Source: Heteronotia binoei
Lineage: Eukaryota
Reading direction: 5' to 3'
NCBI RefSeq assembly: GCF_032191835.1
Contig: NC_083234.1
Coordinates: 2,170,001-2,234,000, forward strand
Length of the DNA stretch: 64,000 nucleotides
Notes under the pieces: model-generated
Databases searched by the model: none
What the model was told of the DNA's origin: nothing
The model's input: only the letters and a program-made list of their open reading frames with translations
Part shown: piece after piece, positions 4,201 to 43,197 of the stretch
Numbering within the stretch: position 1 is the first letter of the stretch
Layout of the letters: each line of letters opens with the position of its first letter
Program-made: the position numbers and the translations under genes

Positions 4201-7200
4201 TGACGTGGTAGACGTCCTGGCTGAATGGGGATGCCTCTATGTGCTGACTAGAGATGGCAAGCTCCATGCGTTGCAGGAGAAGGATACACAGACCAAACTG
4301 GAGGCAAGGGGGCTCATGGCAAAAGTGTCTGGGGCTTGCTGCTTCTGGCAGGAGCTGTGGGCTGGAACCTCCATTCAGAGGCCTGGCACTCCAGTACCCC
4401 ACCGGGAGTTATCAAGGGGTATGGTGCAGGCCATCTGAATCAACAGCTTCTTTTCCCACTCAGCAGATGCTTTTCAAGAAAAACCTGTTTGAAATGGCCA
4501 TTAACTTGGCCAGGAGCCACCACCTAGACAGTGATGGGCTTTCTGAGATCTTCCGCCAGTATGGTGACCATTTGTACAACAAGGGAAACCATGATGGGGC
4601 CATCCAGCAGTATATCCGGTAGGCAAGGGGCAGAGGAGGCTGGCATGTTGGCGGGAAGACATTGGAGCACCACAGAAGTGGACTCTGTGTCTGAGGGCCC
4701 TGCTGCCTTTCTTGCAGGGGTCCTTTTGCATTCCCTTCCTGAGCAGGTATAATAAAGCTGAGGAAGCATTGCCTGAAAAGAGAAGGAATCATGCAAAGGC
4801 ATGGTTTGCAAGTTGAATCAAAACTGTCCTTTTTCTATGTGGGTGCTCAGGAGTTCTGACATGGTGGGGAACATGGACAGGCAGACCTGCAGCTCACCTC
4901 TGAAGGGAGAGAGGCCTTGGCACTGCGGGCAGAGCATCTGCTTTGCATGCAAAAGATCCAGGTGTTCAATTCCTGGTATCTCTGTTTTGTTTTGAATCAG
5001 TTTGTAAGTGATAGTAAGACTTCTTCCCAAAGCCCTTGAGAATTGCTGCTAGTTAGTGTGTGGAGGAAGTACTCTACGGAGCATGCCCGCTGCAGGGATC
5101 TGTCAGATCTGATAAATGCGGATTTTGATACACAGCCTCCCTCTGTCATGCCGTGACTGCAGTATTCAGGCCCTGCACAGTTGGAGGCGGGGTGCTGGGT
5201 GCTGCCTTCTGAGTTGCGCCTTGCAGGGTTGGAAGGCTTCTGCAGGAGCCTAAGGAGACCCCTTTCTCCCCAGGACCATCGGGAAGCTGGAGCCCTCCTA
5301 CGTCATCCGCAAGTTCTTGGATGCTCAGAGGATACACAACTTGACGGCCTACTTGCAGACACTGCACTTGCAGTCCCTGGCCAACGCGGACCACACGACG
5401 CTGCTGCTGAACTGCTACACCAAGCTGAAAGACATCACCAAGCTGGAGGAGTTCATCAAGGTTGGGTGGGGCTCCCTGGGTGCCAGACTCTGGTGTCAAC
5501 TTCAAGCGCCTCCCCGGAGCCTCTTGGCAGGGGGGCTCCTCGGGCAGGACAACCCTTTCTTTGGCGCAGGCAGGCGCGCAGCCTTGTTCCTTCCCTGAGG
5601 CCTTTCCTTTGTCTTCCAGGAGATGGTGTTTATAGCTCCGAATCTAGAATGGGAGTGGGGTGGCTGGTGAAGGGCAGGGAAGCCAAGGCACTCTTCCTGA
5701 GGTGGTCCTGGGGGCATTTTGCTCCAGACACCAGGAGGTGGGTGGTGGTGGTGGTAGTTCGTAGTCCCACCGTGGAAGTGAGTTGAGTTCCTTCTGAGGG
5801 CTGCATGAGGGTTGCCTTGCTCTGTCTTCCCCTGTAGACAAGTGAAAGCGAGGTGCACTTTGACGTGGAGACGGCCATCAGGGTGCTGCGGCAGGCAGGC
5901 TGTTATTCCCACGCTGGGTACTTGGCTGAGAAGCACGCGCACCACGAGTGGTACCTGAAGATCCAGCTGGAGGACATCAAGGTGATGAGCTGCCCGCCTG
6001 CCTGCCTGCCTGTCCTTTTGACACTCCTGGGGGGGCAGGCGGCTGTGTTCTTCCTTTGGGCCCTGTGGTTATCCAAACTGGGGGTGGAGCCTGCTGCATC
6101 CCATCTGCAGGGCACCAGAGCGGGCACCTTGCCAGCCTTCAGCACTTCTTTAATTGGCCTTTTACAACCTTCGTGATATGATATGATAAATTTATTGTCA
6201 TTGTTCTCAAAAAAGGAAAATGAGAGCAACGAAATGAGGTGCTCTTCCACAAACATACCAACACATCAACACTAAAGAAAAAAACATATACATAAACCAC
6301 TTAAATACATCTAAAAAAATACATCTAAAACATTGTGGGGCTCAGGGCTGGAGATGGCTAAACCCCCATTGCTTTCGTCTCCTACTGGACTGGATCTGGG
6401 CCAGTGCTGGGCTGTGCAAGAGCAGCGGCAGGATTGCTGCTTCGTTCGATCCCCCTCCTCCCACCCCGGGGGAGGCAGCTGCTTGGGCACGTGGTCAGCT
6501 GCCGGAGGGTTCAATCCTCTTGCGAGGCAGAGCCTGACCACAAAGCCTCCTCCTTGCAGAACTACCAGGAGGCCTTGCACTACATTGGCAGGCTACCCTT
6601 TGAGCAGGCTGAGAGCAACATGAAGCGCTACGGCAAGATCCTCATGCATCATGTCCCCAAGGAGACCACTGAGCTCCTGAAGGTCCTGTGCACAGCCTAC
6701 CGGCCAGCGGGGAATTCTGAGGGGCTGGCAGTTCCCGAAGGGCGGAAGGTACACCCTGCAGCCAGCGCAAGAAGTCCCCTTGTGGGTCTGCGGGAGGGGG
6801 AGGGAGGAGCTGAGGGCAGCTGGCACTGAAGCTCTGAAACTGGTTTGTCTGTTCCGTGGGCAGCAAGGCAGGGCTTTGGGGTATGGGGGTGGGTGGCTTG
6901 GCATGGGAGGCTCCCTGGATCCTTCCTGCTGGCTCTTCCTGCCCTCCTTCTCGATGCTCCAGTCCCTCATTGTGGCTGTTGGAGCGGGTCCGGCGATCCT
7001 CAGTGTAGCCTTTTTGGCAGTTTCACTAGTAGGAAATAGGTCTGGATGTGACCCACTGTCTCTGGAGCGTCCCAGCTGCTGCTGCCTTCCCTTCTTGCTT
7101 TCCAGGCCAGCCCGGAGGAGTTCATCCCCATTTTTGCCAACAACTCCCGGGAACTGCGAGCCTTCCTCGAGCACATGTCTGAGGTGCAGCCGGACTCTCC

Positions 7201-10200
7201 ACAGGGGGTGTATGACACGCTGCTGGAGCTCCGCCTTCAGAGCTGGGACCACGAGCAGGACCCAAAGGTATGCCTGTGTCTGTGGAGGGGGGGGCTGGTG
7301 GGCTTCTGGCAGCATTCCTACACATCAGTGGGTGTGGAATTGGTAGCCCCCTGCAATACATGAAGCTGCCTTCTACAGAATCAGACCCTTGCGGTCCACT
7401 GAGGTCAGTCTTGTCTACTCAGACTGGCAGCTGCTCTCCAGGGTCTCAGGCAGAGGAAGAAAGGTCTTTCACATCCCCTACTTTCCAGATCCTTTTTTAG
7501 TTGGAGATGCTGCTGGAGACTGAACCTGGGACCTTTTGCAGGCTAAGCAGACGCTCTGCCACTGCGCCATGGCCCCTCCCCAAGCTCCTATCCCCCTTGT
7601 CCTGGCCACAGAGGTGCTCGCCCCCTCCCCCAACTTTGAACCTTTTTTTGTTTTGTAACAGTAGAAAAGAGCAAGAGTCCAGTAGTACCTTAAAGACTAA
7701 CAAAAGTTGCAGCAGGGGAGAAACTGTTGTGAGTCACTGCTCACCTCTTCTTCAGATACCTGTCTTTTCAAGCCACCTGCCCACCCAACCGAGGCAGTAA
7801 ACGATAACACCATTAAATGATGATAAACCTGTTCAGAATTGTGGGGTTTTTAAATTGATTACAGTATTTCTGCTTCACCTTTGTTTGTGGTTCAAGGCAG
7901 CTTGTAATAGATTTTAAAAGTTCAAGTGAAAGCCAGAAGATAACTAACCCCCGATCTTCCCCCTCCCCTCATAAGCACGTGCATGTTTGCGTGTGTGTCT
8001 GAAACAACCACGGGATGGGAGGAGGGCTTGGGGGACTCAGCGAGGGGATGCCAAGCAAAGCAAAGGAGTCCCAAGGATGACCATGAGAGAAGGTGGAAGA
8101 TGAATCTCCCTGAGGAGAAGCAAATTCTGTAACTTACGAGCCACGATTGAGAAGACCCATTCCTGGGTTGCCACTCATCCAGCTTCAGGAGGCGGAGGCA
8201 ACCAAAGCAGGGCCTCTCAAGGTGACCATAGCAGTTGGGTAGGTAAAGATGGGACTAGGCAGTGATGGCTCTATCCATACAGGGCTTTCAAGGTCAGGGG
8301 CAGCACCTTGAATTGGCAGCATAAGTGGAATAAAACTGGAGCAATAAGGTTCCTACAACCTGCTCCAGCCAGAATTCCAGCTACAGAGTTCCTGTTGTAG
8401 ATTCTGGATCCTCTTCCAGGCCAGCCCCACGTAGAATACATTGTAGCAGTCAAATCTGGATGTTTAGGCCAAGCCAGACCACTGATCCATTTTGCCGAGC
8501 ACTGTCTGGTCTGTTCGGTAGCATCTCCTCAGGTTTCAGGCATGGGGAACGGTTATCCCCAGCCCAGTACCCATGACCACGGATGGAGCCGAGCCTGGGA
8601 CTGTCTGTGTGTCAGGCCGGTGCTCCACAGTGGAGCTGAGTGTTCCTTCCCGCCCCCGTCTCCGGAGCCTGATGCTTTTGTGGCTTTGGGTTCTTGGCAG
8701 GTGAAAGAGAAGCTGCACAATGAAGCCATTTCCCTGCTGAAGAGTGGAAGGTTCCGAAGTGCCTTTGATAAGGCTCTGGTCCTCTGCCAGATGCACGGCT
8801 TCAAGGATGGCGTCTTGTACCTCTACGAACAGGGCAAGCTGTGAGTGCAGAGGGGGCGGTGGACCTTTCCCTGTGGGGGGGAGGGGCAGAGGCCTGCCTC
8901 TCACTGGTCCTCTCCCTGGCCCAGGTTCCAGCACATCATGCACTACCACATGCAGCATGAGCAGCACAGGAAGGTGGTGGAGGTCTGTGAGCTCTACGGA
9001 GACCAAGAGCCTTCCCTCTGGGAACAAGCCCTGGGCTACTTTGCCCACAAGGAGGAAGACTGCAAGGAACACATCACGGCTGTGCTCAAGCACATTGAAA
9101 CCAAGAGCCTCATGCCCCCCCTGCTCGGTGAGAGAAGGAAAGGGGCTGGGGGGGGCAGGGCCCCAATTCTGGGAGGGAGGGCAGGCAGGCAGTTGGTGGC
9201 TTCTGGGCCCTTCCACCTGGGCAGCACTAGCCCTTGCTCAGCAGCTGTGTCGAGGGGAGCTGACAAAACGGCAGTTGAAATGAGAGGTGAGGCTGGCCCT
9301 GCTCTCTCTCTCTCCCCCCCCTTTCCTGCGGGGAGCAGCTCCCCAGAGCCCAGCAGTCCCTGTGCCTGGAGGGGACTGTCTAGCCTGCCCTCGTCTGATG
9401 GCTCAGGGTGGGCAGCTTTGCTTGACCCACACAAATACCCGTGACAGGCTAGTTGCACACTGGCCCTGAGGATCAGGGCTAACACAGCCCTTCAGCTGCC
9501 GTTTGCCAGCACCGCCCCCTCCTTTGGTGCATTAATGCTCCAGCAGAACCCCCTCTTGAAGGGCTGGGTTCTAGTGCCCCACAGCAAATGGAGGCCCCGC
9601 TGGAGCACACTGAAAGCAAGGCCTGGCTACTTGTGGAGTGTGAAAGGAAGCAGCCCGGAGAGCAGCAGAAAGCCCAGGTCAGGCTCAAGATGGGCCTGGC
9701 TGCTGTTGGTGTGAGAGGCTGGGAGGTGCAGGCTGGAGCACAGAGAGGCATCTGCCAGCCTTCCCTGTTGTCTCTCCCAGTGGTGCAGACCCTGGCTCAC
9801 AACTCTACAGCCACCCTGTCCGTCATCAAGGACTACCTGGTCAGCAAGCTGCAGAAGCAGAGCCGCCAGATTGAACAGGATGAGCAGAAGATCCAGAAAT
9901 ACCGGGAGGAGACCAAGCGGATCCGCAAGGAGATCGAGGAGCTGAAGAACAGGTAGCTGCAACCCCAGCGGCAATCCTCTGGCAGCAAATTTCACATTTT
10001 AATCCTAGAATCATAAAGTTGGAAGGAATCTCTAGCCGAATTCCCTGCACAACGTAAGAAGTTCACCTTCTTCATTTCCTTCTCCATTTCAAGATCAGCC
10101 TCAGGGGTTTGATCATAAGGGTGGTCATATGGATCACCTCAACTTTCAAGAAGCCCTGAGGGCCCAGTATTTCCACCCGTATCACTTGCGTTGAAGAGTT

Positions 10201-11200
10201 AATTCCTCTTCAGTAGAGATTCCACATGTGCAGCTCTACCCCAAAGGCCAGTGTGTCTTCCTGCATCCAATGTGTTCTCTCAGCAGGCACACTGAAATTT
10301 AGAGAGTATAACGCCTACAACCACCAAATTACGTCTGAGGCGATTATGCTTGATCCGAAATGACAGCAGCTTCAGGGAGGAGGCAGCTGTTGTGGTGTAT
10401 GAACAAAAATGAACATGGGGTTGATGGAGGACAAATATTGCCAGGGCTATCAGAGAAAGGGAATTATTCACATTCTGTGCTTTTGAGGTGTGTGTGTGTT
10501 AAAAGACACATCCAGCTTGTTTGCCAATGAGCACGGTGCCCATAATTAAAACATGGGCTGGAGATTTCCGCAGTGAGGTTGTGGCTGTCTGAAATGTGTT
10601 GCTGGGGAGGTGTGCTGGCTGGTGTCTGACTACCCGGTGTGCTTCCTCCCTCCCTCCCTGCCTCAGCCCCAAGATCTTCCAGAAGACCAAGTGCAGCATC
10701 TGCACGAGCGCGCTGGAGCTGCCCTCGGTGCACTTCCTCTGCAGCCACTCCTTCCACCAGCACTGCTTCGAGAGCTACTCGGAGAGCGGCTCGGAGTGCC
10801 CGACCTGCCTGCCGGAAAACCGCAAGGTGATGGACATGATCCGGGCGCAGGAGCAGAAGCGGGACCTACATGACCAGTTCCAGCACCAGGTGTGTGTGTG
10901 TGTGGCGGGGCTGGGGTGTGGGGAGGAGGGAAGGGGGTAGGGGGCTGTGTGTGGGGGTCCCTGCCTCCCCCCCGCAGCCCCCGACTGAGGCTCTGTCCCC
11001 GTGTCCCCCTGCTGCAGCTGAAGTGCTCCAACGACGGCTTCTCGGTGGTGGCGGACCACTTCGGGCGCGGGGTCTTCAACAAGCTCACGCTGGTCACTGA
11101 CCTCCCTCCAGCGGGCCGAGCCGCCCTCCTCACTGCTGCGGGGCTGGAGGCGGGGCTGCAGCGGGACCTGCTCATCCAGCATGCCAAGCGGAGCACCTAG
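1233..11200 (+). CDS. VPS11: Vacuolar protein sorting 11 (HOPS/CORVET core subunit, RING-H2), 16 exons, 936 aa
   Basis: Exons 1233-1389, 1613-1761, 2186-2321, 2528-2691, 2799-3046, 4102-4303, 4467-4618, 5274-5460, 5838-5981, 6560-6748, 7106-7267, 8701-8840, 8925-9127, 9781-9952, 10667-10889, 11018-11200. They sum to 2811 nt with consistent phases. Peptides MAAYLQWRRFAFFD, DMEGQIWFLPRSL, MLFKKNLFEMAINLA and CSICTSALELPSVHFLCSHSFHQHC match VPS11. Confidence 0.98.
1390..1612 (+). other. U12-type AT-AC intron (VPS11 intron 1)
   Basis: 5' site ATATCCTT at 1390, branch site CCTTAAC at 1596-1602, 3' site AC at 1611-1612. Removing it gives the in-frame FGD-MEGQ junction. Confidence 0.95.
4304..4466 (+). 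other. GC-AG intron (VPS11 intron 6) with tandem CAGCAG acceptor
   Basis: GAG|GCAAGG donor is required for the conserved TKLE-MLFKK junction; there is no GT at this position. Acceptor is CAGCAG at 4461-4466. Confidence 0.85.
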
Positions 11201-11377
11201 CGCCGGGCTGTCAATCTCCCTCCCATTAAAGGGCCGCTCCTCTCTCTCTCTCTCCTTCTTGGGCGGGGCGGGGGGGCGGGGCCCTGGAGCGGAGGGGGCG
11301 GGGCCTGGGTCAGAAACGAGGCGGGAGCGGCGCCTGCGCAAAGCACCGGGGAGGAGGAAGGGGAGGCAGAGGTGCGA

Positions 11378-11423
11378 ATGCCCGCCCGCCACTCCCGCCA
11401 TGGACGCGCCGCCTGTCGTGAGT
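11378..11423 (+). pseudogene. Decayed duplicate of HMBS housekeeping exon 1, inside the VPS11 3' UTR
   Basis: ATG GAC GCG CCG CCT GTC|GTGAGT at 11400-11423 is paralogous to 23837-23860. The upstream ATG (11378) is out of frame here (22 nt spacing versus 21 in copy 2), CCAAT has become CCACT, and the donor context is GTC| rather than GCG|. Confidence 0.7.
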
Positions 11424-11823
11424 GTCCGCTTCCCCTCGCCAGGAGCGCAGCCGTGGGGCAGCCTGGGCCCTCCGAGGGGCTTGGGGGGAGGGGGCTTTCT
11501 TCCTACTCCTTGCGCAAGCTGCGGAGGGAGGCGGGGCGCACCTTGTCGGGGCGTTTGCAGAGAGCTTCGTGGTTCTGGGGGGCTGCTGCTGCTGCTTCTC
11601 CCTCCCACCCCCGGAGCCTTGGGCAGGCTTCCTCGCTTGTCCGCCCGCTTTCCCGGCGGGGCGCCTGCCCCTAGCATCGCTCTCTGCCCCCTAAGCCCGG
11701 GGGGGGGGGGGGGAGTCTGCTGAGGCACTGGGAAAGGAGCGAGGGACGCCTGCAGAACGGTGGGCCTGGCTCCCAGCAGTCAGCCTAGAGAGGGAGAAGA
11801 GTCCCGGAAATGTTGAAGCCAGA

Positions 11824-11837
11824 AATAAATAAATAAA
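11824..11837 (+). terminator. Probable VPS11 polyadenylation signal
   Basis: Three overlapping AATAAA in an (AAAT)n run, about 625 nt after the stop, followed by T-rich sequence. Confidence 0.7.
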
Positions 11838-13894
11838 TGGGAAATTTCTTGGCAGGGCTGGAATGCATGCAACACTCGCTTCCGTGCCAAACGTAAATGT
11901 TTTTTACTGATTGAACTACATGAAGCTTGTCATTTGGATCTTGCAGACTTTATTCCTGAATGAGACTTAAGTGTTTTTGAATATAATCTTGGATTGGCTT
12001 TACACTCTATTCTTTGGCTCTGCATCTCATAACACTTCATAGCCTACGTAAGCAGCGCCCTGCTTGCACCCCAGCCCAGTGGACTCTGGCAGGGTGTGGA
12101 GTCCCAGGGAACACTCCTGGATTTCCCTAACATGTCTTCTGGATAAAAGTGTGTAGTGGTTGAGGTATTAATGGGATTTAAAAGTATACATGTATGGTAA
12201 CGTATGCTGAAGCAGCATACCGAATCCCTTGGTTCATCAAAGCCAGTATTGTGCTGAAACTGGCAGCTGCAGAGTCTCAGGCAGACGTCTTGCCTGGTCC
12301 TTTTACATGGAAATGCTGCTGGGGATTGAACCTGGGACCTTCTGTGTGCCAGGCAGATGCTCTGCTGTTGAGCCCCATAGTGTCTCATCAAATAACCCTT
12401 GCTTGCTTAAGAAAAATAGTAAACATACCCAGTACTTAAAGTTGCAAACTTCTGTATACCCTGCCTTTCTCTTCAGCTGGGAACTACAGTGGCTTACATC
12501 ATGCCCCATTTTATTTTCACAACAGCCTTGTGAAGTAGGTCACGTTGAGGGAGGTGGTGAGCGCCCCCTCACTGGCAGTCTTCAAGCAGCATCTGGATGA
12601 ATACTTGTCAGGGGTTCTCTAGTCTGATTCTGCAATGAACAGGGGCTTGGACTAGACAGCCTGTTTGGCCCCTTCCCACTCTATGATTCTCTGAGCATGT
12701 GATTGGCCCAAGGTCCTGCAGTGCTCCTCAGTGGCAGAGGGGGGATTTGAACACAGGTCTTTCAGATCCTGGTCTGACTTGCTAACCATTCTGACACAAC
12801 ACTGAATTAATATTATTATTAAACATGTTATTGCATATTAATTGTTACACAATTTATTTACTTTTTCAAAAAAATGTGAAAGCATTATCTACGTCTGAAG
12901 TACAAAAGGTTCTTTCCCTTCAGTGCACCCCCCAAGTTTCATGCTGCAAGTTTTCAGTGCATGGGGCCCTGCTGCTAGAGCCTCCCTCCCCCCATTTCTT
13001 TCCCCCAGCTGAATCCTGGATGCACAATCAGTTACTCCAAGGAAGTGTGGCTGTTGAAAATGTTACAGGGCGCTGGCAGTACTGGACAGACTGTTAGTTC
13101 GATTTCCATTGAGTTTGGAAGCAGTGTGCCATTTGGCTAGCCCCCCCCCCCCCCATATGTGGGTGAAATGCCTCTTGTTTTCTTGCAAAAATGGCCCCAT
13201 TGTGAGCTGCATGCAGGCAGAAGGGTGCCTTCCTTCTCTTGACACGTTTTCCCCAGAACAATTTCTTTCTGTGCAGAACTTGGGCAGCTCCTTTCTGGCA
13301 GCGCCTGCAGCTGCGCTTCCTTCCGGGCTCAGCCCCTTTAGTCCTCTCTCCTCTTCCTTATCTCTGGCCCCACATTGGGTCTCATTTTGCAAAGAGAGGC
13401 ACTCTTGACCAGACGCGGGTTGAGTCGCTGGCAAAGACCGTGCGGAGCTGGAGATGGCAGATGCCCTGCTGTGGCTTAGTCAGGTAACAAGGGGACAGGG
13501 CTAGAGTGCCTGCCTTGCCTACAGGAGTGCTTGGGGAGCCTGCTGCCTGCCTTATTAGGTGGCTCAGGAGGAGCAGAGACTGCAGTCTCTCTCCCCCCGC
13601 ACACACACACATATACTCTGCTTTGTCATTCTTAGGGCTGTGGCTTTGCAGCAAGATGCCAGGCTACCCACTAACCATGCTCCCTGGTCCCTCTGCAAGC
13701 AGTAGCTCCCCAGGCCTTCCTTCCCTCCAACCACCTGCTTGTGGTCTCCAGTGCCGGGGATCCATCTGTGGGTGGCTGTGGGGCAGATGAGCGGGCTAGA
13801 CACCCTCCGCTCCTTTCATGTCTTTGATTCTGTGCTGGAGAGAAGGGCAGAATGTCATTCAGCTGCGTGGCACTGGGCATTATGGGGGAGCCTA

Positions 13895-14250
13895 AGAAGA
13901 ACCCAGCTGGATCAGACTAGCGAGGGCCCCTCTGGTCTCACACAGGGGCCAGCCAGTTCCTCTGGAGAGCCAACAACAGGGCAGAGAGGCCGAGGCCCTT
14001 CCCCTTATGCTGCCTCCTGGCTGTTCTGGGATTCAGAGATTAGTGCCCTTGAACATGGAGGTTCCCCCCAGTCACCACAGCTCGAGCCTCTGAGAGACGT
14101 ATCCTCCATGAATCTGTCAGATCCCCTTTTAAAGCTGTTTACTCCTGTGGCCGTCACGCCATCCTCTGGCGGAGAATTCCATGTTTTAATGACTCTGTCT
14201 GAAGTAGTAGTTTCTTTTGTTCGTCCTGAGCCTCCCGCTCATCAGCATAA
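13895..14250 (-). mobile_element. Older CR1-type LINE 3' fragment (second subfamily), duplicated at about 26968-27325
   Basis: Reverse complement of a CR1 ORF2 end ([27 protein letters not shown] in the copy-2 frame) plus the tail that also forms the 134-bp arrays. Confidence 0.7.
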
Positions 14251-14358
14251 TTTAATGTTTGGATTAATATCGCGCAAGTGGGCTCAGGGCAACTTACAAC
14301 AATAAAATCGAACAGAGTTAAAGGATATCATAAAACCAGCATTACAAAACGGAAGGGC

Positions 14359-14419
14359 ATCTTCGGCTCATCCTGTTCAATCTGGTGGCTCTGCTTCTGC
14401 AGCTTGCTGACCAGGTAGT
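14359..14419 (-). pseudogene. Inverted 61-bp fragment of VPS11 exon 14
   Basis: Reverse complement ACTACCTGGTCAGCAAGCTGCAGAAGCAGAGCCACCAGATTGAACAGGATGAGCCGAAGAT equals 9832-9892 with 2 mismatches. Confidence 0.93.
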
Positions 14420-16242
14420 ATTAGAAGTAGGAAACCAGCCAGGGAGGCAGTGGGGCCCTTGGATGACCATGGGGTAAAAGGATTACTGAAGGAGGATAGG
14501 GAAATGGCTAAGCTAAATGAATTTTTTGCCTCCGTCTTCACAGTGGAAGATGAGAACTTTTTGCCCGCCCCAGAACCACTAGTTTTGGAAGGGGTATTGA
14601 AAGACCTGAGTCAGATTGAGGTGACAAAAGAGGAGGTCCTACAACTGATAGACAAATTAAAAACTAGTAAGTCACCGGGTCCGGATGGCATACATCCGAG
14701 AGTTCTGAAAGAACTCAAAGTTGAACTTGTGGATCTTCTAACAAAAATCTGTAATCTTTCATTGAAATCTGCCTCCGTTCCTGAGGACTGGAAGGTAGCA
14801 AATGTCACCCCCATCTTTAAAAAAGGTTCCAGAGGAGACCCGGGAAATTACAGGCCAGTCAGTCTGACTTCAATACCGGGAAAGTTGGTAGAAACCATTA
14901 TCAAGGACAGAATGAGTAGGCACACTGATGAACACGGGTTATTGAGGAAGACTCAGCATGGGTTCTGCAAGGGAAGATCTTGCCTCACTAACCTGTTACA
15001 TTTCTTTGAGGGGGTGAACAAACATGTGGACAAAGGAGACCCAATAGATGTTGTTTACCTTGACTTCCAGAAAGCTTTTGATAAAGTTCCTCATCAAAGG
15101 CTCCTTAGAAAGCTTGAGAGTCATGGAGTAAAAGGACAGGTCCTCTTGTGGATCAAAAACTGGCTGAGTAATAGGAAGCAGAGAGTGAGTATAAATGGGC
15201 AGTCTTCGCAGTGGAGGACGGTAAGCAGTGGGGTGCCGCAGGGCTCGGTACTGGGTCCCATGCTCTTTAACTTGTTCATAAATGATTTAGAGTTGGGAGT
15301 GAGCAGTGAAGTGGCCAAGTTTGCGGATGACACTAAATTGTTCAGGGTGGTGAGAACCAGAGAGGATTGTGAGGAACTCCAAAGGGATCTGTTGAGGCTG
15401 GGTGAGTGGGCGTCAACGTGGCAGATGCGGTTCAATGTGGCCAAGTGCAAAGTAATGCACATTGGGGCCAAGAATCCCAGCTACAAATACAAGTTGATGG
15501 GGTGTGAACTGGCAGAGACTGACCAAGAGAGAGATCTTGGGGTCGTGGTAGATAACTCACTGAAAATGTCAAGACAGTGTGCGTTTGCAATAAAAAAGGC
15601 CAACGCCATGCTGGGAATTATTAGGAAGGGAATTGAAAACAAATCAGCCAGTATCATAATGCCCCTGTATAAATCGATGGTGCGGTCTCATTTGGAGTAC
15701 TGTGTGCAGTTCTGGTCGCCGCACCTCAAAAAGGATATTATAGCATTGGAGAAAGTCCAGAGAAGGGCAACTAGAATGATTAAAGGGCTGGAGCACTTTC
15801 CCTATGAAGAAAGGTTGAAACGCTTGGGACTCTTTAGCTTGGAGAAACGTCGACTGCGGGATGACATGATAGAGGTTTACAAGATAATGCATGGGATGGA
15901 GAAAGTAGAGAAAGAAGTACTTTTCTCCCTTTCTCACAATACAAGAACTCGTGGGCATTCGATGAAATTGCTGAGCAGACAGGTTAAAACGGATAAAAGG
16001 AAGTACTTCTTCACCCAAAGGGTGATTAACATGTGGAATTCACTGCCACAGGAGGTGGTGGCGGCCACAAGTATAGCCGCCTTCAAGAGGGGTTTAGATA
16101 AAAATATGGAGCACAGGTCCATCAGTGGCTATTAGCCACAGTGTATGTGTGTATATAAAATTTTTTGCCACTGTGTGACACAGAGTGTTGGACTTGATGG
16201 GCCGTTGGCCTGATCCAACATGGCTTCTCTTATGTTCTTATG
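14420..16242 (+). mobile_element. Young 5'-truncated CR1 LINE with open reverse-transcriptase ORF
   Basis: Uninterrupted 561-codon ORF 14450-16135 with RT motifs (PGPDGIHPRVLKE, YLDFQKAFDKV, GVPQGSVLGP, KFADDTKL). The endonuclease domain is missing. The 3' UTR ends in TTCTTATG repeats. Confidence 0.96.
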
Positions 16243-19200
16243 CTTCCTTAGATTTATACCTGCTCAGGAAGAGAATGCAAAAGGACCCCTGCAAGAAAGG
16301 CAGCAGGGCCCTCAGACACAGAGTCCACTTCTGTGGTGCTCCAATGTCTTCCCGCCAACATGCCAGCCTCCTCTGCCCCTTGCCTACCGGATATACTGCT
16401 GGATGGCCCCATCATGGTTTCCCTTGTTGTACAAATGGTCACCATACTGGCGGAAGATCTCAGAAAGCCCATCACTGTCTAGGTGGTGGCTCCTGGCCAA
16501 GTTAATGGCCATTTCAAACAGGTTTTTCTTGAAAAGCATCTGCTGAGTGGGAAAAGAAGCTGTTGATTCAGATGGCCTGCACCATACCCCTTGATAACTC
16601 CCGGTGGGGTACTGGAGTGCCAGGCCTCTGAATGGAGGTTCCAGCCCACAGCTCCTGCCAGAAGCAGCAAGCCCCAGACACTTTTGCCATGAGCCCCCTT
16701 GCCTCCAGTTTGGTCTGTGTATCCTTCTCCTGCAACGCATGGAGCTTGCCATCTCTAGTCAGCACATAGAGGCATCCCCATTCAGCCAGGACGTCTACCA
16801 CGTCATCAAAGACTGAGCTGTAAGCGATGAACTTGTTGCTGAGATCATAAACATTCAGGATTTGCTTGTCAGAATTTTGTGGGTCACCCGCAGCAAAGTC
16901 AGACCTGGAGCACAAATAAACAAGAAGGAGAGTTTCCCTACATTTCTAACCCTGACCCCCCCAAAGCCCCACAGTTCATAAGCCGTCGCAGCACAGAAGT
17001 GAGTATTTCCTCTGAAAGAACTTTCCATATCCATTGCCTGAGCAATTCTTGGTCTACTAACCTCAGCATTTCCAGGCATATGCAGCAGGCTTCTGCCCAC
17101 AGATGGGAAATCTAGACACTCCACATGCAAGACTTTGCACTTAACCTAGCAGTTTCCCATTCCTCATTCCCTGCACAATCCCCACCCCTCACATCTACCA
17201 TCTCTGCAGTGCCTGTTTGTGCCTTCTTGCCTTCAATGTCTTGATTCCCAGATCTCACTGCACTGCATGTTGTGATGACCAGTTGCTCTTACAAGTGGCA
17301 AGCTTGTTTATTATTACTGAAGCACCTAAACTCTGATTTATCAGGAGTCTTAATGACCAGCAGTAAGAACCCATTCTCAGAGATAAAGTATCAATTTTCT
17401 AATAGTACATTACTCAAAATGTTAAGTATGAACATTCTTGTATAACACCCTGCCCTTCAAAGATGTCACTCATTCCAAAAGGGGGAAAATTCAAAAGAGT
17501 TTGAAAGCCTTTTTTTGTTAAGTGCCCAGAAAAATACGCAGGAGAAAGTGTTCAAATTTTGCCATTTTGTCTCCACATCTTTACTCTCAAGAATACCTCC
17601 TTGCAGATGATTTTGGGACACCTGCTTGACCAATGACGGTCAACAGGACACCACATGAGAAAGTCATGCTGGGGCAGGCCTTCATCTTGGGATTCCTGGG
17701 GTAGATCCCATGCAACACTCCCAGGAGAAGTCGCACTGCCTGTGGACAGGGCCTTTCTCACAAGTGGCAGAAAGCCAAGAAAACTCCACCAGTTCTTACT
17801 GCTTTCTTGCCAGAAGGAACAAAATATTGGGTTCATATCCTCAGGCTCTGCGTCCAATGAGAACATGAAAAAACATAAAAAGATAGTTGGCCTCTCTCTA
17901 CCCCACTCCAGACAGGCAGTACAACAAATCTACAACAAGTCTGTCCTAAGGAGCCTTACTTTGGAGAGGTCTTCCGGTCCTTGGACACAATGACAAGGTA
18001 GCCCCGATACCAATGGGCAATAAGCTTCTGCCCCTCGAAAGCAAAACATGGCCCACGCTCATCAGGCTGATACAGATACACACACTCATCCCCTGCTACA
18101 ATAAACTGGAGGTCCTGGGAGGGGTCACTCAGGGTAGAGCAGCGCAGCCCACAGCCACGAATATCCAATTCCTGTCGCGGATAATCCTTCACAGAAAGTA
18201 TGTAGCACTATAAAGGCAACAATGAAACTCATTAGGTGGAATAATAGGTGACCCAGACTGTGCCATCTTGATCTCTTCCCCAATCAACCCAACATCGTAC
18301 CTGGATGCTCTCAGTGGTAGCAACAAACAGATGTGTTGTTTTGCCAGACTGACGGAAGGCAAGGCCGGTAACTGGATAACTGCCTTCATGAAGGGTCTGA
18401 GTCTTACTGTGCCGATCTCGTGTTATGTCTCCTTTTGTAAGCACAACGCTCCCATCTGTGAAGCCTAAGGAAGCAGAGGGAAAGAGAATACTGTATTCTC
18501 ATAGCAACCCTAGAACATCTAGTGCTCTCTATCCACAGAAAACAGTCTAAAAGTCCAATTACAGGAACATGGAAAGTGAAAGTATTGCTCAAACCCAGAA
18601 GCTTTCCCCCATACCTTTCCACTTTACTAGCACATCCTGCAGTAGAAGCACCAGCCTTGCTTCTACTTACCAATAGCCATGAAGTTCAGATTCTCATGGA
18701 CTGTGAGACAGGACACAACCGTGGGCTTGTTGCCTGGTATTGCAGGGAATATCCTAGTACACAGAGGATTCCCACCATCACGTTTCTCTAGATTCCAAAC
18801 TTTGACCTGCATAACATTACAAGGAAACTGGTTTAAGGACAGCATGTTCCCCAAGTAATTCTGTTGTACTGAAAGTTAACTGCTAGTGTCCTCAAAAGAT
18901 GACTCTTTGCTCCACCTGACAGAACCTCAGAACAAAGTTTACCTATCCAGAGGCCCCTTTTACCTAATCCTTCCTCCAAAAAGTTCAGGATGGCATCTGC
19001 CTTTTACCCCTAGAACAGTCTCTGAGGTAAGTTAAACTGAGCACCTACAACTGACTCAAGGATATCCCACCAGTTCAATGACAGAAGTGGGCTGGAACTT
19101 GGGTCTCCTGCATCCAGATCCAGCCACACCATCATGCTGCTGCTGTTGTTTGCAGCCACACTCCTTCCCCTGCAATAGCTAGTCTGTCAGGAAGAACCTG

Positions 19201-19403
19201 CAGACCCTCTACCCTCCCCAACTTACCAAAGGATTAATACCTTCTTCATCTTTCCCAAAGGAAACCAAGACGCTGTGCTGCTTCAACTGATAGAGGTGAG
19301 TCACTCTCAGCTTATAAGCCTGAAAGCTGCTGAGTTCCAGGGACCGCGGCAGGAACCATATCTGGCCTTCCATACGTAGGCTTCAGTTAAGGCCCTCTCC
19401 GGA
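16240..19403 (-). pseudogene. Inverted unprocessed partial VPS11 copy (end of intron 1 to intron 7; exons 2-7)
   Basis: Reverse complement of 1585-4769, introns included, roughly 96-98% identical by eye. No exon 1 or promoter. Exon 2 copy (19375-19227) changes D>G at its first base and SILVSVGED>SVLVSFGKD. A 14-bp deletion between CTTTAT repeats lies before the exon 5 copy. Confidence 0.96.
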
Positions 19404-22400
19404 GCCCCCGTCTGAGGCTCTGTCCCTCCGTGTGTGGGGGGGTCCCTGCCTCCACCCCCCCCCCGCAGCCCCCAACTGAGGCTCTGTGGCGCGGGAAGAG
19501 GCGGCCGGCTGGCGTCTCTCCGCTTGTGGGGGGGCTGGGGGGGTCCCTGTCTCCCCCCCGCTGCCCCCGACTGAGGCTCTGTCCCTCCGTGTGGGGGGGG
19601 CTGGGGTGTGGGGGGCTGTGTGGGGAGGTTCCTGCCTCCACCCTCCCCGCAGCCCCCGTCTGAGGCTCTGTCCCTCGTGTGGGGGGGGGCTGGGGTGTGG
19701 GGGGGTTATGTGGGGGGTCCCTGCCTCCACCCCCCCCGCAGCCCCCGTCTGAGGCTCTGTCCCTCGTGTGGGGGGGGCTGGGGTGTGGGGGGGTTATGTG
19801 GGGGGTCCCTGCCTCCAACCCCCCGCAGCCCCCGTCTGAGGCTCTGTCCCTCGTGTGGGGGGGGCTGGGGTGTGGGGGGGTTATGTGGGGGGGTCCCTGC
19901 CTCCCCCCCCCTGCCGCCCCCGACTGAGGCTCTGTCCCTCGTGTGGGGGGGGGGGCTGGGGTGTGGGGGGGCTGTGGGGGGGTCCCTTCCTCCACCCCCC
20001 CCCGCAGCCCCCGTCTGAGGCTCTGTTCCTCGTGTGTGGGGGGGGTTATGTGGGGGGTCCCTGCCTCCACCCCCCCCCCGCAGCCGTCTGAGGCTCTGTT
20101 CCTCGTGGGGGGGGCTGGGGTGTGGGGGGGTTACGTGGGGGGTCCCTGCCTCCCCCCCCCCGCCGCCCCCCGACTGAGGCTCTGTCCCTCGTGTGGGGGG
20201 GGGGCTGGGGTGTGGGGGGGTTATGTGGGGGGTCCCTGCCTCCCCCCCCGCCGCCCCCGACTGAGGCTCTGTCCCTCGTGTGGGGGGGGCTGGGGTGTGG
20301 GGGGGCTGTGGGGGGTCCCTTCCTCCACCCCCCCCCGCAGCCCCCGTCTGAGGCTCTGTTCCTCGTGTGTGGGGGGGGTTATGTGGGGGGTCCCTGCCTC
20401 CACCCCCCCCGCAGCCGTCTGAGGCTCTGTTCCTCGTGGGGGGGGGCTGGGGTGTGGGGGGGTTATGTGGGGGGTCCCTGCCTCCCCCCCCCGCCGCCCC
20501 CGACTGAGGCTCTGTCCCTCGTGTGGGGGGGGCTGGGGTGTGGGGGGGTTATGTGAGGGGTCCCTGCCTCCCCCCCCCCCCGCCGCCCCCGACTGAGGCT
20601 CTGTCCCTCGTGTAGGGGGGGCTGGGGTGTGGGGGGGCTGTGGGGGGTCCCTTCCTCCACCCCCCCGCAGCCCCCGTCTGAGGCTCTGTCCCTCGTGTGG
20701 GGGGGGCTGGGGTGTGGGGGGGGCTGTGGGGGGTCCCTTCCTCCACCCCCCCCCGCAGCCCCCGTCTGAGGCTCTGTTCCTCCTGTGTGGGGGGGTTATG
20801 TGGGGGGTCCCTGCCTCCACCCCCCTGCAGCCGTCTGAGGCTCTGTTCCTCGTGGGGGGGGGGCTGGGGTGTGGGGGGGTTATGTGGGGGGTCCCTGCCT
20901 CCCCCCCCCCGCCGCCCCCGACTGAGACTCTGTTCCTCGTGTGGGGGGGCTGTGAGGGGGGGTCCCTGCCTGCACCCCCGGCTGAGGCTCTGTCCCTCGT
21001 GTGTGGGGGGTTATGTGTGGGGTCCCTGCCTCCACTCCCCCCGCAGCCCCCGTCTGAGGCTCTGTCCCTCGTGTGGGGGGGGCTGGGGTGTGGGGGGGTT
21101 ATGTGGGGGGTCCCTGCCTCCCCCCCGCCGCCCCCGACTGAGGCTCTGTCCCTCCGTGTGGGGGGGGCTGGGGTGTGGGGGGGGCTGTGGGGGGTCCCTT
21201 CCTCCACCCCCCCGCAGCCCCCGTCTGAGGCTCTGTTCCTCGTGTGTGGGGGGGGTTATGTGGGGGGTCCCTGCCTCCACCCCCCCGCAGCCGTCTGAGG
21301 CTCTGTTCCTCGTGGGGGGGGCTGGGGTGTGGGGGGGTTATGTGGGGGGTCCCTGCCTCCCCCCCCCGCCGCCCCCGACTGAGACTCTGTTCCTCGTGTG
21401 GGGGGGCTGGGGTGGGGGGGCTGTGAGGGGGGGTCCCTGCCTGCACCCCCGGCTGAGGCTCTGTCCCTCGTGTGTGGGGGGTTATGTGTGGGGTCCCTGC
21501 CTCCACTCCCCCCGCAGCCCCCGTCTGAGGCTCTGTCCCTCGTGTGGGGGGGGCTGGGGTGTGGGGGGGTTATGTGGGGGGTCCCTGCCTCCCCCCCCGC
21601 CGCCCCCGACTGAGGCTCTGTCCCTCGTGTGGGGGGGGGCTGGGGTGTGGGGGGGTTATGTGGGGGGTCCCTGCCTCCACCCCCCCCCGCAGCCGTCTGA
21701 GGCTCTGTCCCTCGTGTGGGGGGGGCTGGGGTGTGGGGGGGTTATGTGGGGGGTCCCTGCCTCCACCCCCCCGCCGCCCCCGTCTGAGGCTCTGTCCCTC
21801 GTGTGGGGGGGGCTGGGGTGTGGGGGGGTTATGTGGGGGGTCCCTGCCTCCCCCCCCGCCGCCCCCGTCTGAGGCTCTGTCCCTCGTGTGGGGGGGGGCT
21901 GGGGTGTGGGGGGGTTATGTGGGGGGTCCCTGCCTCCCCCCCCGCCGCCCCCGTCTGAGGCTCTGTCCCTCGTGTGGGGGGGGCTGGGGTGTGGGGGGGT
22001 TATGTGGGGGGTCCCTGCCTCCCCCCCGCCGCCCCCGACTGAGGCTCTGTCCCTCCGTGTGGGGGGGGGCTGGGGTGTGGGGGGGCTGTGGGGGGTCCCT
22101 TCCTCCACCCCCCCGCAGCCCCCGTCTGAGGCTCTGTTCCTCGTGTGTGGGGGGGTTATGTGGGGGGTCCCTGCCTCCACCCCCCCGCAGCCGTCTGAGG
22201 CTCTGTTCCTCGTGGGGGGGGGCTGGGGTGTGGGGGGGTTATGTGGGGGGTCCCTGCCTCCCCCCCCCGCCGCCCCCGACTGAGACTCTGTTCCTCGTGT
22301 GGGGGGGCTGGGGTGGGGGGGCTGTGAGGGGGGGTCCCTGCCTGCACCCCCGGCTGAGGCTCTGTCCCTCGTGTGTGGGGGGTTATGTGTGGGGTCCCTG

Positions 22401-23460: not shown

Positions 23461-23477
23461 GTGTCCCCCTGCTGCAG

Positions 23478-23644
23478 CTGAAGTGCTCCAACGACGGCTT
23501 CTCGGTGGTGGCGGACCACTTCGGGCGCGGGGTCTTCATCAAGCTCACGCTGGTCACTGAGCGAGCCGCCCTCGTCGCTGCTGGGGGCTGGAGGCGGGGC
23601 TGCAGCGGGACCTGCTCATCCAGCTCGCCCAGCGGAGCACCCAG
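23478..23644 (+). pseudogene. Degenerate duplicate of VPS11 exon 16
   Basis: Intact CTGCAG acceptor, then LKCSNDGFSVVADHFGRGVFIKLTLVT, a 15-nt deletion, a 1-nt frameshift, and the stop TAG changed to CAG (23642-23644). Confidence 0.92.
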
Positions 23645-23836: not shown

Positions 23837-26800
23837 ATGGACGCGCCGCCTGCGGTGAGTGGCCGCTTCGCCTCGCCGGGAGGGAGGGAGGGAGGGAAGG
23901 CTGGGAGAGCGCCGCCGCCTTGTCTGCCCGGGGCTTCCGTTCTTCCTGCCTCCTTGTCCTGCTCGGGCAGGCAGGCGGGGCGTTTGCAGGGAGCTTCGCG
24001 GTTCTGGGGGTCTCTGCCGCCGCGTCCCCCTCCCTGGGAGCCCGGGCCCCCCTCGCCTCAGCCCGCTTTCCCTGCCCCAGCCTCGCTCTCTGCCCCCTAA
24101 GCCCGGGGGGGGGGCGCTGGGAAAGGAGCGAGGGACGCCTGCAGAACGGGGGGGGGGGGGCTGGCTCCCAGCAGTCAGCCTAGAGAGGGAGAAGAGTCCC
24201 GGAAATGTTGAAGCCAGAAATAAATAAAGAAATGGGAAATTTCTTTGCGGGGGGGGGGGGCTGAAATGCATGCAACACTCGCTTCCGTGCCAAACTTAAT
24301 TGTTTTTTACTGATTGAACTACATGAAGCTTGTCATTTGGATCTTGTTGCAGAATTTATTCCTGAATGAGACTTAAGTGTTTTTGAATATAATCTTGGAT
24401 TGGGTTTACACTCTGTTCTTTGGCTCTGCATCTCATAACACTCCATAGCCAATCTAAGCAGCGCCCTGCTTGCACCCCAGCCCAGTGGACTCTGGCAGGG
24501 CGTGGAGTCCCAGGGAACACTCCTGGATTTCCCTAACATGTCTTCTGGATAAAAGTGTGTAGTGGTTGAGGTATTAATGGGATTTAAAAGTATACATGTA
24601 CGGTAACGTATACTGAAGCAGCATACCGAATCCCTTGGTTCATCAAAGCCAGTATTGTGCTGAAACTGGCAGCTGCAGAGTCTCAGGCAGACGTCTTGCC
24701 TGGTCCTTTTACATGGAAATGCTGCTGGGGATTGAACCTGGGACCTTCTGTGTGCCAGGCAGATGCTCTGCTGTTGAGCCCCATAGTGTCTCATCAAATA
24801 TCCCTTGCTTGCTTAAGAAAAATAGTAAACATACCCAGTACTTAAAGTTGCAAACTTCTGTATACCCTGCCTTTCTCTTCAGCTGGGAACTAGAGTGGCT
24901 TACATCATGCCCCATTTTATTTTCACAACAGCCTTGTGAAGTAGGTCAGGTTGAGGGAGGTGGTGAGCGCCCCCTCACTGGCAGCCTTCAAGCAGCATCT
25001 GGATGAATACTTGTCAGGGGTTCTCTAGTCTGATTCTGTTGAGGCTGGGTGAGTGGGCGTCAACGTGGCAGATGTGGTTCAATGTGGCCAAGTGCAAAGT
25101 AATGCACATTGGGGCCAAGAATCCCAGCTACAAATACAAGTTGATGGGGTGTGAACTGGCAGAGACTGACCAAGAGAGAGATCTTGGGGTCGTGGTAGAT
25201 AACTCACTGAAAATGTCAAGACAGTGTGCGTTTGCAATAAAAAAGGCCAACGCCATGCTGGGAATTATTAGGAAGGGAATTGAAAACAAATCAGCCAGTA
25301 TCATAATGCCCCTGTATAAATCGATGGTGCGGTCTCATTTGGAGTACTGTGTGCAATTCTGGTCGCCACACCTCAAAAAGGATATTATAGCATTGGAGAA
25401 AGTCCAGAGAAGGGCAACTAGAATGATTAAAGGGCTGGAGCACTTTCCCTATGAAGAAAGGTTGAAACGCTTGGGACTCTTTAGCTTGGAGAAACGTCGA
25501 CTGCGGGGTGACATGATAGAGGTTTACAAGATAATGCACGGGATGGAGAAAGTAGAGAAAGAAGTACTTTTCTCCCTTTCTCACAATACAAGAACTCGTG
25601 GGCATTCGATGAAATTGCAGAGCAGACAGGTTAAAATGGATAAAAGGAAGTACTTCTTCACCCAAAGGGTGATTAACATGTGGAATTCACTGCCACAGGA
25701 GGTGGTGGCGGCCACAACTATAGCCACCTTCAAGAGGGGTTTAGATAAAAATATGGAGCAGAGGTCCATCATCGGCTATAAGCCACAGTGTATGTGTGTA
25801 TATAAAATTTTTGGCCACTGTGTGACACAGAGTGTTGGACTGGATGGGCCGTTGGCCTGATCCAACATGGCTTTTCTTATGTTCTTATGTTCTGCAATGA
25901 ACAGGGGCTTGGACTAGACAGCCTGCCTGGCCCCTTCCCACTCTATGATTCTCTGAGCATGTGATTGGCCCAAGGTCCTGCAGTGCTCCTCAGTGGCAGA
26001 GGGGGGATTTGAACACAGGTCTTTCAGATCCTGGTCTGACTTGCTAACCATTCTGACACAACACTGAATTAATATTATTATTAAACATGTTATTGCATAT
26101 TAATTGTTACACAATTTATTTACTTTTTCAAAAAAATGTGAAAGCATTATCTACGTCTGAAGTACAAAAGGTTCTTTCCCTTCAGTGCACCCCCCAAGTT
26201 TCATGCTACAAGTTTTCAATGCATGGGGCCCTCCCTCCATTTCTTTCCCCAGGTGGTTCAAATTCTGTACACACCTGAATCCTCGAAGCACAATCAGTTA
26301 CTCCAAGGAAATGTGGCTGTTGAAAATGTTACAGGACACTGGCAGTACTGGACAGACTGTTAGTTCGATTTCCATTGAGTTTGGAAGCAGTGTGCCATTT
26401 GGCTAGCCCCCGCTCCCCAATATGTGGGTGAAATGGCTCTTGTTTTCTTGCAAAAATGGCCCCATTGTGAGCTGCATGCAGGCAGAAGGGTGCCTTCCTT
26501 CTCTTGACACGTTTTCCCCAGAACAATTTCTTTCTGTGCAGAACTTGGGCAGCTCCTTTCTGGCAGCGCCTGCAGCTGCGCTTCCTTCCGGGCTCAGCCC
26601 CTTTAGTCCTCTCTCCTCTTCCTTATCTCTGGCCCCACATTGGGTCTCATTTTGCAAAGAGAGGCACTCTTGACCAGACGCGGGTTGAGTCGCTGGCAAA
26701 GACCGTGCGGAGCTGGAGATGGCAGATGCCCTGCTGTGGCTTAGTCAGGTAACAAGGGGACAGGGCTAGAGTGCCTGCCTTGCCTACAGGAGTGCTTGGG

Positions 26801-37999: not shown

Positions 38000-43197
<5,198 letters not shown>

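What the first reader, a model, noticed from the sequence alone, without database searches (positions are those of the whole stretch)
14359..16242. CR1 insertion replaces 5,062 bp of the inverted VPS11 copy
Seen: the left flank of the CR1 is inverted VPS11 9892-9832 (exon 14) and the right flank is inverted VPS11 4769 downward (intron 7). The flanks are collinear, so 4770-9831 (exons 8-13 and part of 14) is missing. There is no TSD, and the 3' junction shares ATG between the TTCTTATG tail and the target. Known: LINE insertion-mediated target deletions lack TSDs and show microhomology. Inference: the 61-bp exon-14 remnant records the original 8.3-kb extent of the inversion.
Basis: partly seen in the sequence, partly recalled or inferred. 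Interest (0 to 1): 0.7.

Follow-up and report, generated by a model that had tools for sequence, protein, structure and literature searches.

The report
CR1 element bridging a 5-kb gap
A truncated CR1 jumping gene sits where about 5 kb is missing from a dead, inverted copy of the VPS11 gene; it most likely removed that DNA as it inserted, which is a known side effect of such elements and harms nothing here.

Summary

- **Left flank:** 14359-14419 is the reverse complement of VPS11 9892-9832 (59/61 identical, inside exon 14).
- **The element:** 14420-16242 is a 5'-truncated CR1. It has an open 571-codon ORF2 piece and a complete 3' end.
- **Right flank:** from 16240 rightwards the sequence is the reverse complement of 4769-1585, and ATG is shared at the junction.
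- **Consequences:** there is no target-site duplication. The forward-copy interval 4770-9831 (5,062 bp, exons 8-13 and the start of exon 14) has no counterpart in the inverted copy.

A second CR1 of the same subfamily (25035-25889) serves as an in-window control. It has a 5-bp duplication, and its empty site survives in the paralogous block.

The interpretation, one CR1 insertion that removed the target DNA, is the best single reading (about 0.5) but is not proven. The sequence alone cannot exclude three rivals:

- a normal insertion followed by a later deletion;
- recombination between two CR1s;
- a 61-mer laid down as a short templated patch when the duplication formed, which would make the loss smaller than 5 kb.

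A word search of this scan's notes found no similar case.

This is an ordinary kind of event (a LINE insertion-associated deletion) in non-functional DNA. Interest is low to moderate.

The parts
14351..14358 (.). 8-nt filler (GGAAGGGC) between the end of direct-repeat block A (10916-14350) and the inverted VPS11 remnant
   Evidence: Three-way alignment of the window against A' and against rc VPS11. No template for the filler exists in the window beyond chance 8-9-mers.
14359..14419 (-). 61-nt remnant of VPS11 exon 14 in inverted orientation (reverse complement of 9892-9832), forming the left flank of the CR1
   Evidence: BLAST gives 59/61 identity, E 5.6e-23. The source lies inside the ORF piece 9588-9956 that encodes ...DYLVSKLQKQSRQIEQDEQKIQKY....
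14420..16242 (+). 5'-truncated CR1 LINE (1,823 nt): ORF2 from about residue 411 of 982 to its stop codon, then the 3' UTR and an octamer tail ending ...TTCTTATG
   Evidence: Pfam RVT_1, E 2e-36. It is 87% identical over 571 aa to residues 411-982 of a full-length EN+RT protein, P0001. The 3' end aligns to the end of CR1#2 and of L001.
14420..16135 (+). Uninterrupted ORF2 reading frame (571 codons plus stop) of the CR1 fragment
   Evidence: the ORF listing and the translation used.
16240..16242 (.). ATG shared by the CR1 tail and the target; the presumed primer/tail annealing site at the 3' junction
   Evidence: Junction alignment. The BLAST match to the forward copy starts at 16240.
16243..19403 (-). 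Inverted copy of VPS11 from intron 7 down to intron 1 (reverse complement of 4766-1585; exons 7 to 2), forming the right flank of the CR1
   Evidence: substitution divergence is 1.27%.
4770..9831 (+). Forward-copy interval with no counterpart in the inverted copy (5,062 bp: rest of intron 7, exons 8-13, start of exon 14)
   Evidence: Coordinates follow. The interval carries no internal or flanking repeat that could have mediated the loss.
25035..25889 (+). Control: a second, 855-nt CR1 of the same subfamily (1.9% different) in block A', with the 5-nt TSD TTCTG and 4-nt 5' microhomology
12628..12632 (+). Empty site of the control CR1 in block A (TTCTG)
   Evidence: One search compared.

Best explanation
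A block duplication placed an inverted copy of VPS11 (9892 down to 1585) between two direct copies of the 3.4-kb block 10916-14350. Afterwards an active CR1 integrated into intron 7 of that dead copy by target-primed reverse transcription.

The window's minus strand was nicked next to ...GGCA/ATGCTTCC. Its 3' end (…GCAT-3') paired with the AUG-3' end of the CR1 RNA and primed cDNA synthesis. These steps are inferred from the intact tail and the 3-nt overlap.

The cDNA stopped at about ORF2 codon 411. It was not joined a few bases away, which would have produced the 3-5-nt duplication typical of the CR1 clade. It was joined almost bluntly to a DNA end 5 kb upstream, inside the inverted exon 14. 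The intervening 5,062 bp was lost. This step is inferred.

The event has no functional effect, because the forward VPS11 keeps all 16 coding blocks.
For: - **Flanks:** they are collinear and in the same orientation, with a 5,062-bp gap.
- **The insert:** it is a 3'-complete, 5'-truncated CR1 with the subfamily's canonical tail.
- **Junctions:** ATG is shared at the 3' junction. There is no TSD, whereas the same subfamily made a 5-nt TSD at 25035-25889 with the empty site preserved at 12628-12632.
- **Timing:** the CR1 is absent from the forward copy at 4769/4770, so it is not older than the duplication.
- **Target choice:** the forward sequence just beyond the breakpoint resembles the CR1 tail (14/24, null 4.4e-4; ATG-anchored 11/21, null 0.005). 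The control's target does the same (15/24, null 1.5e-4). This suggests that this sequence was present when the site was chosen and was lost afterwards.
- **Not a second target:** the 5' junction site in exon 14 does not look like a CR1 target (best 11/24 over 21 registers, P 0.28). That argues against a second, independent CR1 integration there.
- **No other cause of deletion:** no repeat in the forward copy brackets 4770-9831.
- **Literature:** TSD-less LINE-mediated deletions with intact tails and 0-5-nt 5' microhomology are established for L1 (10.1101/179705; PMC2881922). Long target-site truncations occur with CR1/L2-clade elements in cell assays, and the CR1-clade TSD peak is 3-5 nt (PMC4245944).
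Against: - The pre-insertion state comes from a paralogue. No orthologous or allelic undeleted copy was seen.
- Strict microhomology at the 5' junction is at most 1 nt, and it was judged against a single relative that is only 87% identical in protein.
- Rough rate arguments give only a few-fold preference for one event over insertion followed by deletion. Ordinary deletions do occur in these copies: a 191-nt deletion separates A from A'.
- The tail-likeness argument is post hoc and rests on two insertions.
Confidence: 0.5

Rival explanations
1. Two steps. The CR1 first inserted normally into the inverted intron 7, with a short TSD and perhaps at greater length. Later an unrelated end-joining deletion removed its 5' part, the TSD and about 5 kb of the inverted copy.
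For: The end product would be identical to what is seen. The near-blunt junction fits ordinary end joining. Deletions do occur in these young paralogues: 191 nt with CTG microhomology separates A from A', and there are six small indels in the inverted arm. The CR1 may be nearly as old as the duplication, which leaves time for a second event: the CR1-CR1 difference is 1.9% against 1.3-2.6% between the paralogous copies.
Against: It needs a second event with one breakpoint inside this particular element. My rough rate estimate, based on published primate numbers recalled from memory and not computed here, favours a single event by only about 3-4 fold.
Confidence: 0.15
2. Two CR1s of the same subfamily inserted in the same orientation, one in the inverted exon 14 and one in the inverted intron 7. 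Unequal recombination between them removed the 5 kb and left one hybrid element. An assembler collapsing two such copies would give the same picture.
For: The subfamily was active here: there are two young insertions within about 9 kb of non-satellite duplicated DNA. A hybrid element would lack a matching TSD, as observed.
Against: - It needs two further insertions plus a recombination.
- Independent copies differ by about 1.9%, and the longest identical tract is 280 nt, which is poor substrate for recombination.
- The exon-14 site lacks the tail-like target seen at both verified CR1 targets.
- The window has no N and resolves a 4-kb 86-nt minisatellite. That points to a long-read assembly, in which collapse of 1.8-kb repeats 5 kb apart is unlikely.
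Confidence: 0.12
3. The inverted copy was never continuous. When the duplication formed, the replication machinery switched template three times and laid down a short exon-14 patch (61 nt or somewhat more) next to an inverted segment that started a little beyond 4769. The CR1 then inserted near that junction and removed only a small stretch across it. The loss is real but far smaller than 5,062 bp, and the 61-mer does not record an 8.3-kb inversion.
For: The neighbouring junction (14350/14359) already carries 8 untemplated bases, which marks an error-prone, multi-step join of the kind that often includes short templated insertions. Small LINE-associated deletions are more common than 5-kb ones. 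Same orientation and correct order of the 61-mer would arise by chance about one time in four.
Against: It requires the CR1-associated loss to span that particular junction. A two-switch model (14350 to 9892 inverted, then 1585 to about 10975) explains the whole architecture with fewer steps. The divergence of the 61-mer (2/61) fits the age of the other arm.
Confidence: 0.12
4. One complex event. CR1 reverse transcription at a break was part of the same rearrangement that built the inverted duplication, with the cDNA bridging two ends.
For: The CR1s differ from each other about as much as the duplicated arms do, so the insertion could be as old as the duplication. L1-mediated complex rearrangements are documented in tumours (10.1101/179705).
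Against: No feature requires it. The control CR1 shows ordinary post-duplication activity of the subfamily. The other two junctions of the duplication contain no CR1 sequence.
Confidence: 0.05

Closest known systems
L1 insertion-mediated (L1-mediated) deletions in primate genomes, cultured cells and tumours
   Same: A 3'-intact, 5'-truncated LINE with its tail; an endonuclease-type 3' junction; no TSD; target DNA missing between collinear flanks; kilobase-scale loss; 0-5-nt microhomology or a blunt 5' join (10.1101/179705; PMC2881922).
   Different: The element is a CR1, with an octamer tail in place of poly(A) and a normal TSD of 3-5 nt. The event is in the germline and, as far as one assembly shows, fixed. 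The reference for the lost DNA is a paralogue in the same genome, not an orthologous empty site.
Long target-site truncations of CR1/L2-clade LINEs (ZfL2-1, ZfL2-2) in retrotransposition assays
   Same: The same LINE clade. Most inserts have about 5-nt TSDs and a minority show truncations longer than 20 nt (2 of 30 in HeLa; frequent without Ku70) (PMC4245944).
   Different: Those are engineered zebrafish elements in cultured cells. Here the element is natural and sits in an amniote genome, and the inferred loss is 5 kb.
Endonuclease-independent (non-classical) L1 insertion at double-strand breaks
   Same: No TSD, and usually a target deletion (18 of 21 loci; PMC1920257).
   Different: That class is defined by 3' truncation, no tail and no endonuclease-type site. 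Here the 3' end and tail are complete and the tail overlaps the target by 3 nt, so the defining features are not met.
Recombination-associated deletions between dispersed repeats (Alu-Alu, L1-L1; solo-LTR formation)
   Same: They leave a single element without matching TSDs between collinear flanks.
   Different: They need two parental elements. No trace of a second CR1 is seen here, and the 5' site does not look like a CR1 target.

Membership tests
CR1-clade LINE | Reverse transcriptase and AP-type endonuclease in one ORF2 | tested here: met
   RVT_1, E 2e-36, in the fragment. The fragment aligns over its full length (87% identity) to residues 411-982 of P0001, whose precomputed domains are Exo_endo_phos + Exo_endo_phos_2 + RVT_1. 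The endonuclease part itself is missing here because of the 5' truncation. The best named relatives are bird and turtle CR1-type proteins.
CR1-clade LINE | 3' end with an 8-nt microsatellite (typical ATTCTRTG) preceded by a hairpin | tested here: inconclusive
   The octamer tail is met...CTTCTCTTATG TTCTTATG, shared with CR1#2 and L001, the latter carrying one more unit (motif from PMC8665684). The hairpin is not settled. An inverted repeat GUUGGA...UCCAAC is visible, but the fold energy is not unusual (z -1.2).
CR1-clade LINE | Short TSD (peak 3-5 nt) at ordinary insertions | tested here: met
   The control copy at 25035-25889 has the TSD TTCTG, with its empty site at 12628-12632. The clade value is taken from PMC4245944.
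LINE insertion-mediated deletion (TPRT type) | Insert with a complete 3' end and tail, and a priming-type 3' junction | tested here: met
   the canonical tail ends at 16242 and ATG overlaps the target.
LINE insertion-mediated deletion (TPRT type) | No target-site duplication | tested here: met
   the anchored repeat is 1 nt under four definitions of the insert; the control has 5 nt.
LINE insertion-mediated deletion (TPRT type) | Flanks collinear in the pre-insertion sequence, with the intervening DNA missing | tested here: inconclusive
   Met against the paralogous forward copy. The true pre-insertion allele of the inverted copy is not available.
LINE insertion-mediated deletion (TPRT type) | Insertion and deletion are one event (an empty, undeleted orthologous or allelic site and no intermediate) | not testable with these tools
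An exact-protein look-up of a junction ORF found nothing.
LINE insertion-mediated deletion (TPRT type) | Microhomology or a few extra bases at the 5' junction (seen in most but not all cases) | tested here: inconclusive
   At most 1 nt (T) is shared and there is no filler, judged against one related full-length copy, L001.
Endonuclease-independent LINE insertion | 3' truncation and absence of the tail | tested here: not met
   The 3' end and tail are complete.

The most novel reading that the evidence does not exclude
The CR1 cDNA was not a later passenger. It acted as a bridge in the same germline event that created the inverted VPS11 duplication. That would be a natural, inherited LINE-mediated complex rearrangement in a CR1-rich genome, of the kind so far documented mainly for L1 in tumours. 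A weaker version is that this is the first concrete natural example of a kilobase-scale CR1-mediated deletion, with target choice guided by about 24 nt of similarity to the element's own tail.
Probability: 0.06. Interest if true: 0.55.

Novelty: new member of a known kind. Interest (0 to 1): 0.3.

Why it matters
If it was a single event, this is a clean natural example of a CR1-clade LINE deleting kilobases on insertion, as L1 does. A full-text search found only one paper, a general review, that mentions both CR1 and 'insertion-mediated deletion'. The example bears on how CR1-rich genomes lose DNA.

The locus is also convenient. Because the target lies in a young duplication, the genome carries its own 'before' sequence, and a sister insertion 9 kb away provides a normal-insertion control.

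The event itself has no functional consequence, because it lies in a dead inverted gene fragment. The mechanism is well known for other LINEs.

Tried and rejected
- **Independent contigs:** an exact-protein look-up of the ORF spanning the 3' junction (16220-16543) found nothing. The protein search returned no identical CR1 ORF, so this genome seems not to be in that collection.
- **RNA template switch:** I considered that the reverse transcriptase switched onto VPS11 mRNA to make the 61-mer. I rejected this because the 61-mer is antisense to VPS11 while the CR1 is sense on the same strand. A chimaera made by template switching would carry both in sense.
- **Endonuclease-independent insertion:** rejected, because the 3' end and tail are intact.
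- **Repeat-mediated deletion:** rejected, because the forward copy has no repeats bracketing 4770-9831.
- **TSD around a larger unit:** I looked for a TSD around 61-mer+CR1 and around filler+61-mer+CR1 and found none.
- **Template for the filler:** none found for the 8-nt filler.
- **Hairpin by energy:** not significant.
- **Earlier scan notes:** a word search for similar CR1 deletions found none.
- no CR1 consensus was built; the 5' junction was compared with single copies only.

Full report
**What is there**

The window carries a complete forward VPS11 gene on the + strand. ORF pieces give 16 coding blocks between about 1250 and 11200. Pfam hits to PEP5_VPS11_N, TPR_PEP5_VPS11, RING and VPS11_C run collinearly along them.

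Downstream lies a young compound duplication. In order, it consists of:

- block A (10916-14350);
- 8 untemplated bases (14351-14358);
- a 61-nt inverted piece of exon 14 (14359-14419, the reverse complement of 9892-9832, 59/61 identical);
- a CR1 (14420-16242, + strand);
- an inverted copy of VPS11 from intron 7 to intron 1 (16240-19403, the reverse complement of 4769-1585);
- a 4-kb minisatellite with an 86-nt unit (19404 to about 23460);
- block A' (23383-27424).

The paralogous arms differ by 1.3% (inverted against forward) and by 1.6-2.6% (A against A') in substitutions. These are evolved copies, not a trivial fold-back artefact. The window has no N.

**The element**

14420-16135 is an uninterrupted 571-codon frame with an RVT_1 domain. 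It aligns from its first codon, at 87% identity, to residues 411-982 of P0001, a 982-aa endonuclease plus reverse transcriptase protein. The best named relatives are bird and turtle CR1-type proteins.

The 3' end (...CATGGCTTCTCTTATGTTCTTATG) is the canonical end of this subfamily. It is shared with a second copy in the window and with the full-length relative L001, which has one more octamer unit. The fragment is therefore 3'-complete and 5'-truncated. An octamer tail is the CR1 hallmark (PMC8665684, PMC4316615). The hairpin could not be confirmed by folding energy (z -1.2).

**The junctions**

At the 5' side, VPS11 homology ends at 14419 and CR1 homology begins at 14420. There is no filler and at most one shared base, judged against L001. 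At the 3' side, the last three tail bases (ATG, 16240-16242) also match the target.

No direct repeat flanks the insert under four definitions of its borders. That interval holds six coding blocks (8-13) and the start of block 14.

**An internal control**

A second CR1 of the same subfamily (25035-25889; 855 nt; 1.9% different) sits in A'. It is absent from A, where the empty site reads ...GA TTCTG CAATG. It has a 5-nt TSD and 4 nt of 5' microhomology, which is the pattern published for the CR1 clade (TSD peak 3-5 nt; PMC4245944). So the subfamily was active after the duplication and normally leaves a TSD. This makes the missing TSD at the first element meaningful.

**A new line of evidence**

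For both elements, the pre-insertion target resembles the last 24 nt of the CR1.

| Site | Matches to the CR1 tail | Null |
|---|---|---|
| rc(4790-4767), target of the first CR1 | 14/24 | 4.4e-4 (window-wide) |
| the same site, 21 nt upstream of the shared ATG | 11/21 | 0.005 (ATG-anchored) |
| 12609-12632, empty site of the control CR1 | 15/24 | 1.5e-4 (window-wide) |
| end of the 61-mer, the neighbour of 4769 if the copy was never continuous | 7/21 | chance level |
| exon-14 site at the 5' junction, best of 21 registers | 11/24 | P 0.28 |

For the first CR1, the tail-like stretch is now missing from the inverted copy. This suggests it was there when the site was chosen and was lost afterwards.

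The exon-14 site shows no tail-likeness, which argues mildly against a separate CR1 having integrated there. This argument is post hoc and rests on two insertions.

**Weighing the histories**

The hallmarks match LINE insertion-mediated deletion as described for L1: tail present, no TSD, kilobase loss, and 0-5-nt microhomology or a blunt 5' join. The proposed mechanism is that the cDNA joins to an upstream DNA end (10.1101/179705; PMC2881922). Long target-site truncations are also seen with CR1/L2-clade elements in cell assays (PMC4245944). Endonuclease-independent insertion is excluded by the intact 3' end (criteria in PMC1920257).

Three rivals give the same end product.

1. **Normal insertion, then an unrelated deletion.** Ordinary deletions do occur in these copies, for example 191 nt between A and A'.
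2. **Recombination between two CR1s.** This needs two more insertions. Independent copies share at most 280 identical bases in a row.
3. **A templated patch.** The 61-mer may have been made when the duplication formed, next to a junction that already has 8 untemplated bases. A smaller CR1-associated loss would then span that junction.

My order-of-magnitude rate reasoning uses primate figures recalled from memory, not computed here. It favours a single event over each rival by only a few fold.

A template switch of the reverse transcriptase onto VPS11 mRNA is rejected, because the 61-mer is antisense to VPS11 while the CR1 is sense.

**What could not be done**

The assembly at the two junctions, other alleles and sister species are therefore all untested. 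An exact look-up of a junction-spanning ORF found nothing.

Resolution of a 4-kb GC-rich minisatellite without gaps suggests a long-read assembly. That makes a collapse between two 1.8-kb repeats unlikely, but this is indirect evidence.

**Verdict**

The kind of event is well known for L1 and is expected for CR1. A full-text search found only one paper, a general review, mentioning both CR1 and 'insertion-mediated deletion', so a documented natural CR1 case would be a modest addition. The event has no functional consequence, since the forward VPS11 is intact.

Noticed in passing
window 4767-4790 and 12609-12632: Both young CR1 insertions chose targets that resemble the last 24 nt of the element itself (14/24 and 15/24; window-wide nulls 4.4e-4 and 1.5e-4). 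This hints at tail-guided target choice in this CR1 subfamily, but it rests on only two sites.
   Followed up: partly
window 16273-16921 (against 4733-4085): There are 650 nt with no difference between the inverted and forward copies, while the rest of the arm differs by about 1.3%. About 8 differences would be expected in a tract of that length. This may be a gene-conversion tract ending about 30 nt from the CR1.
   Followed up: partly
window 16243-16256: Two substitutions and a 3-nt indel fall within 15 nt of the CR1 3' junction, where about 0.2 would be expected. The cause is unexplained. It could be repair-associated or the unconverted edge of the tract above.
   Followed up: no
window 13584-13774 against 26847/26848: 191 nt are present in block A and absent from A', with CTG-type microhomology at the edges. 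This is an ordinary deletion (or insertion) that arose after the duplication.
   Followed up: partly
window 1-246 (continuing to about 401), minus strand: 3.7 tandem copies of a 67-nt unit that is the CR1 3' end (hairpin region plus octamer tail), attached to an older CR1 3' fragment. A LINE tail has been amplified into a small satellite.
   Followed up: no
window 19404-23460: A 4-kb array of about 47 copies of a G/C-rich 86-nt unit. The unit occurs once in the forward copy near 10916-11004. The array starts exactly where the inverted VPS11 copy ends (19403, matching 1585).
   Followed up: partly
window 14351-14358: Eight bases (GGAAGGGC) lie between block A and the inverted exon-14 remnant. 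They have no template in the window, so this is an untemplated or unidentified filler at the duplication junction.
   Followed up: yes
window 41401-42454 and 54806-55234: A tandem array with a 134-nt unit (7.9 copies). Related copies lie in inverted orientation near 54.8-55.2 kb, and single units lie at 13895-14005 and 26967-27079. It is probably SINE-derived.
   Followed up: no
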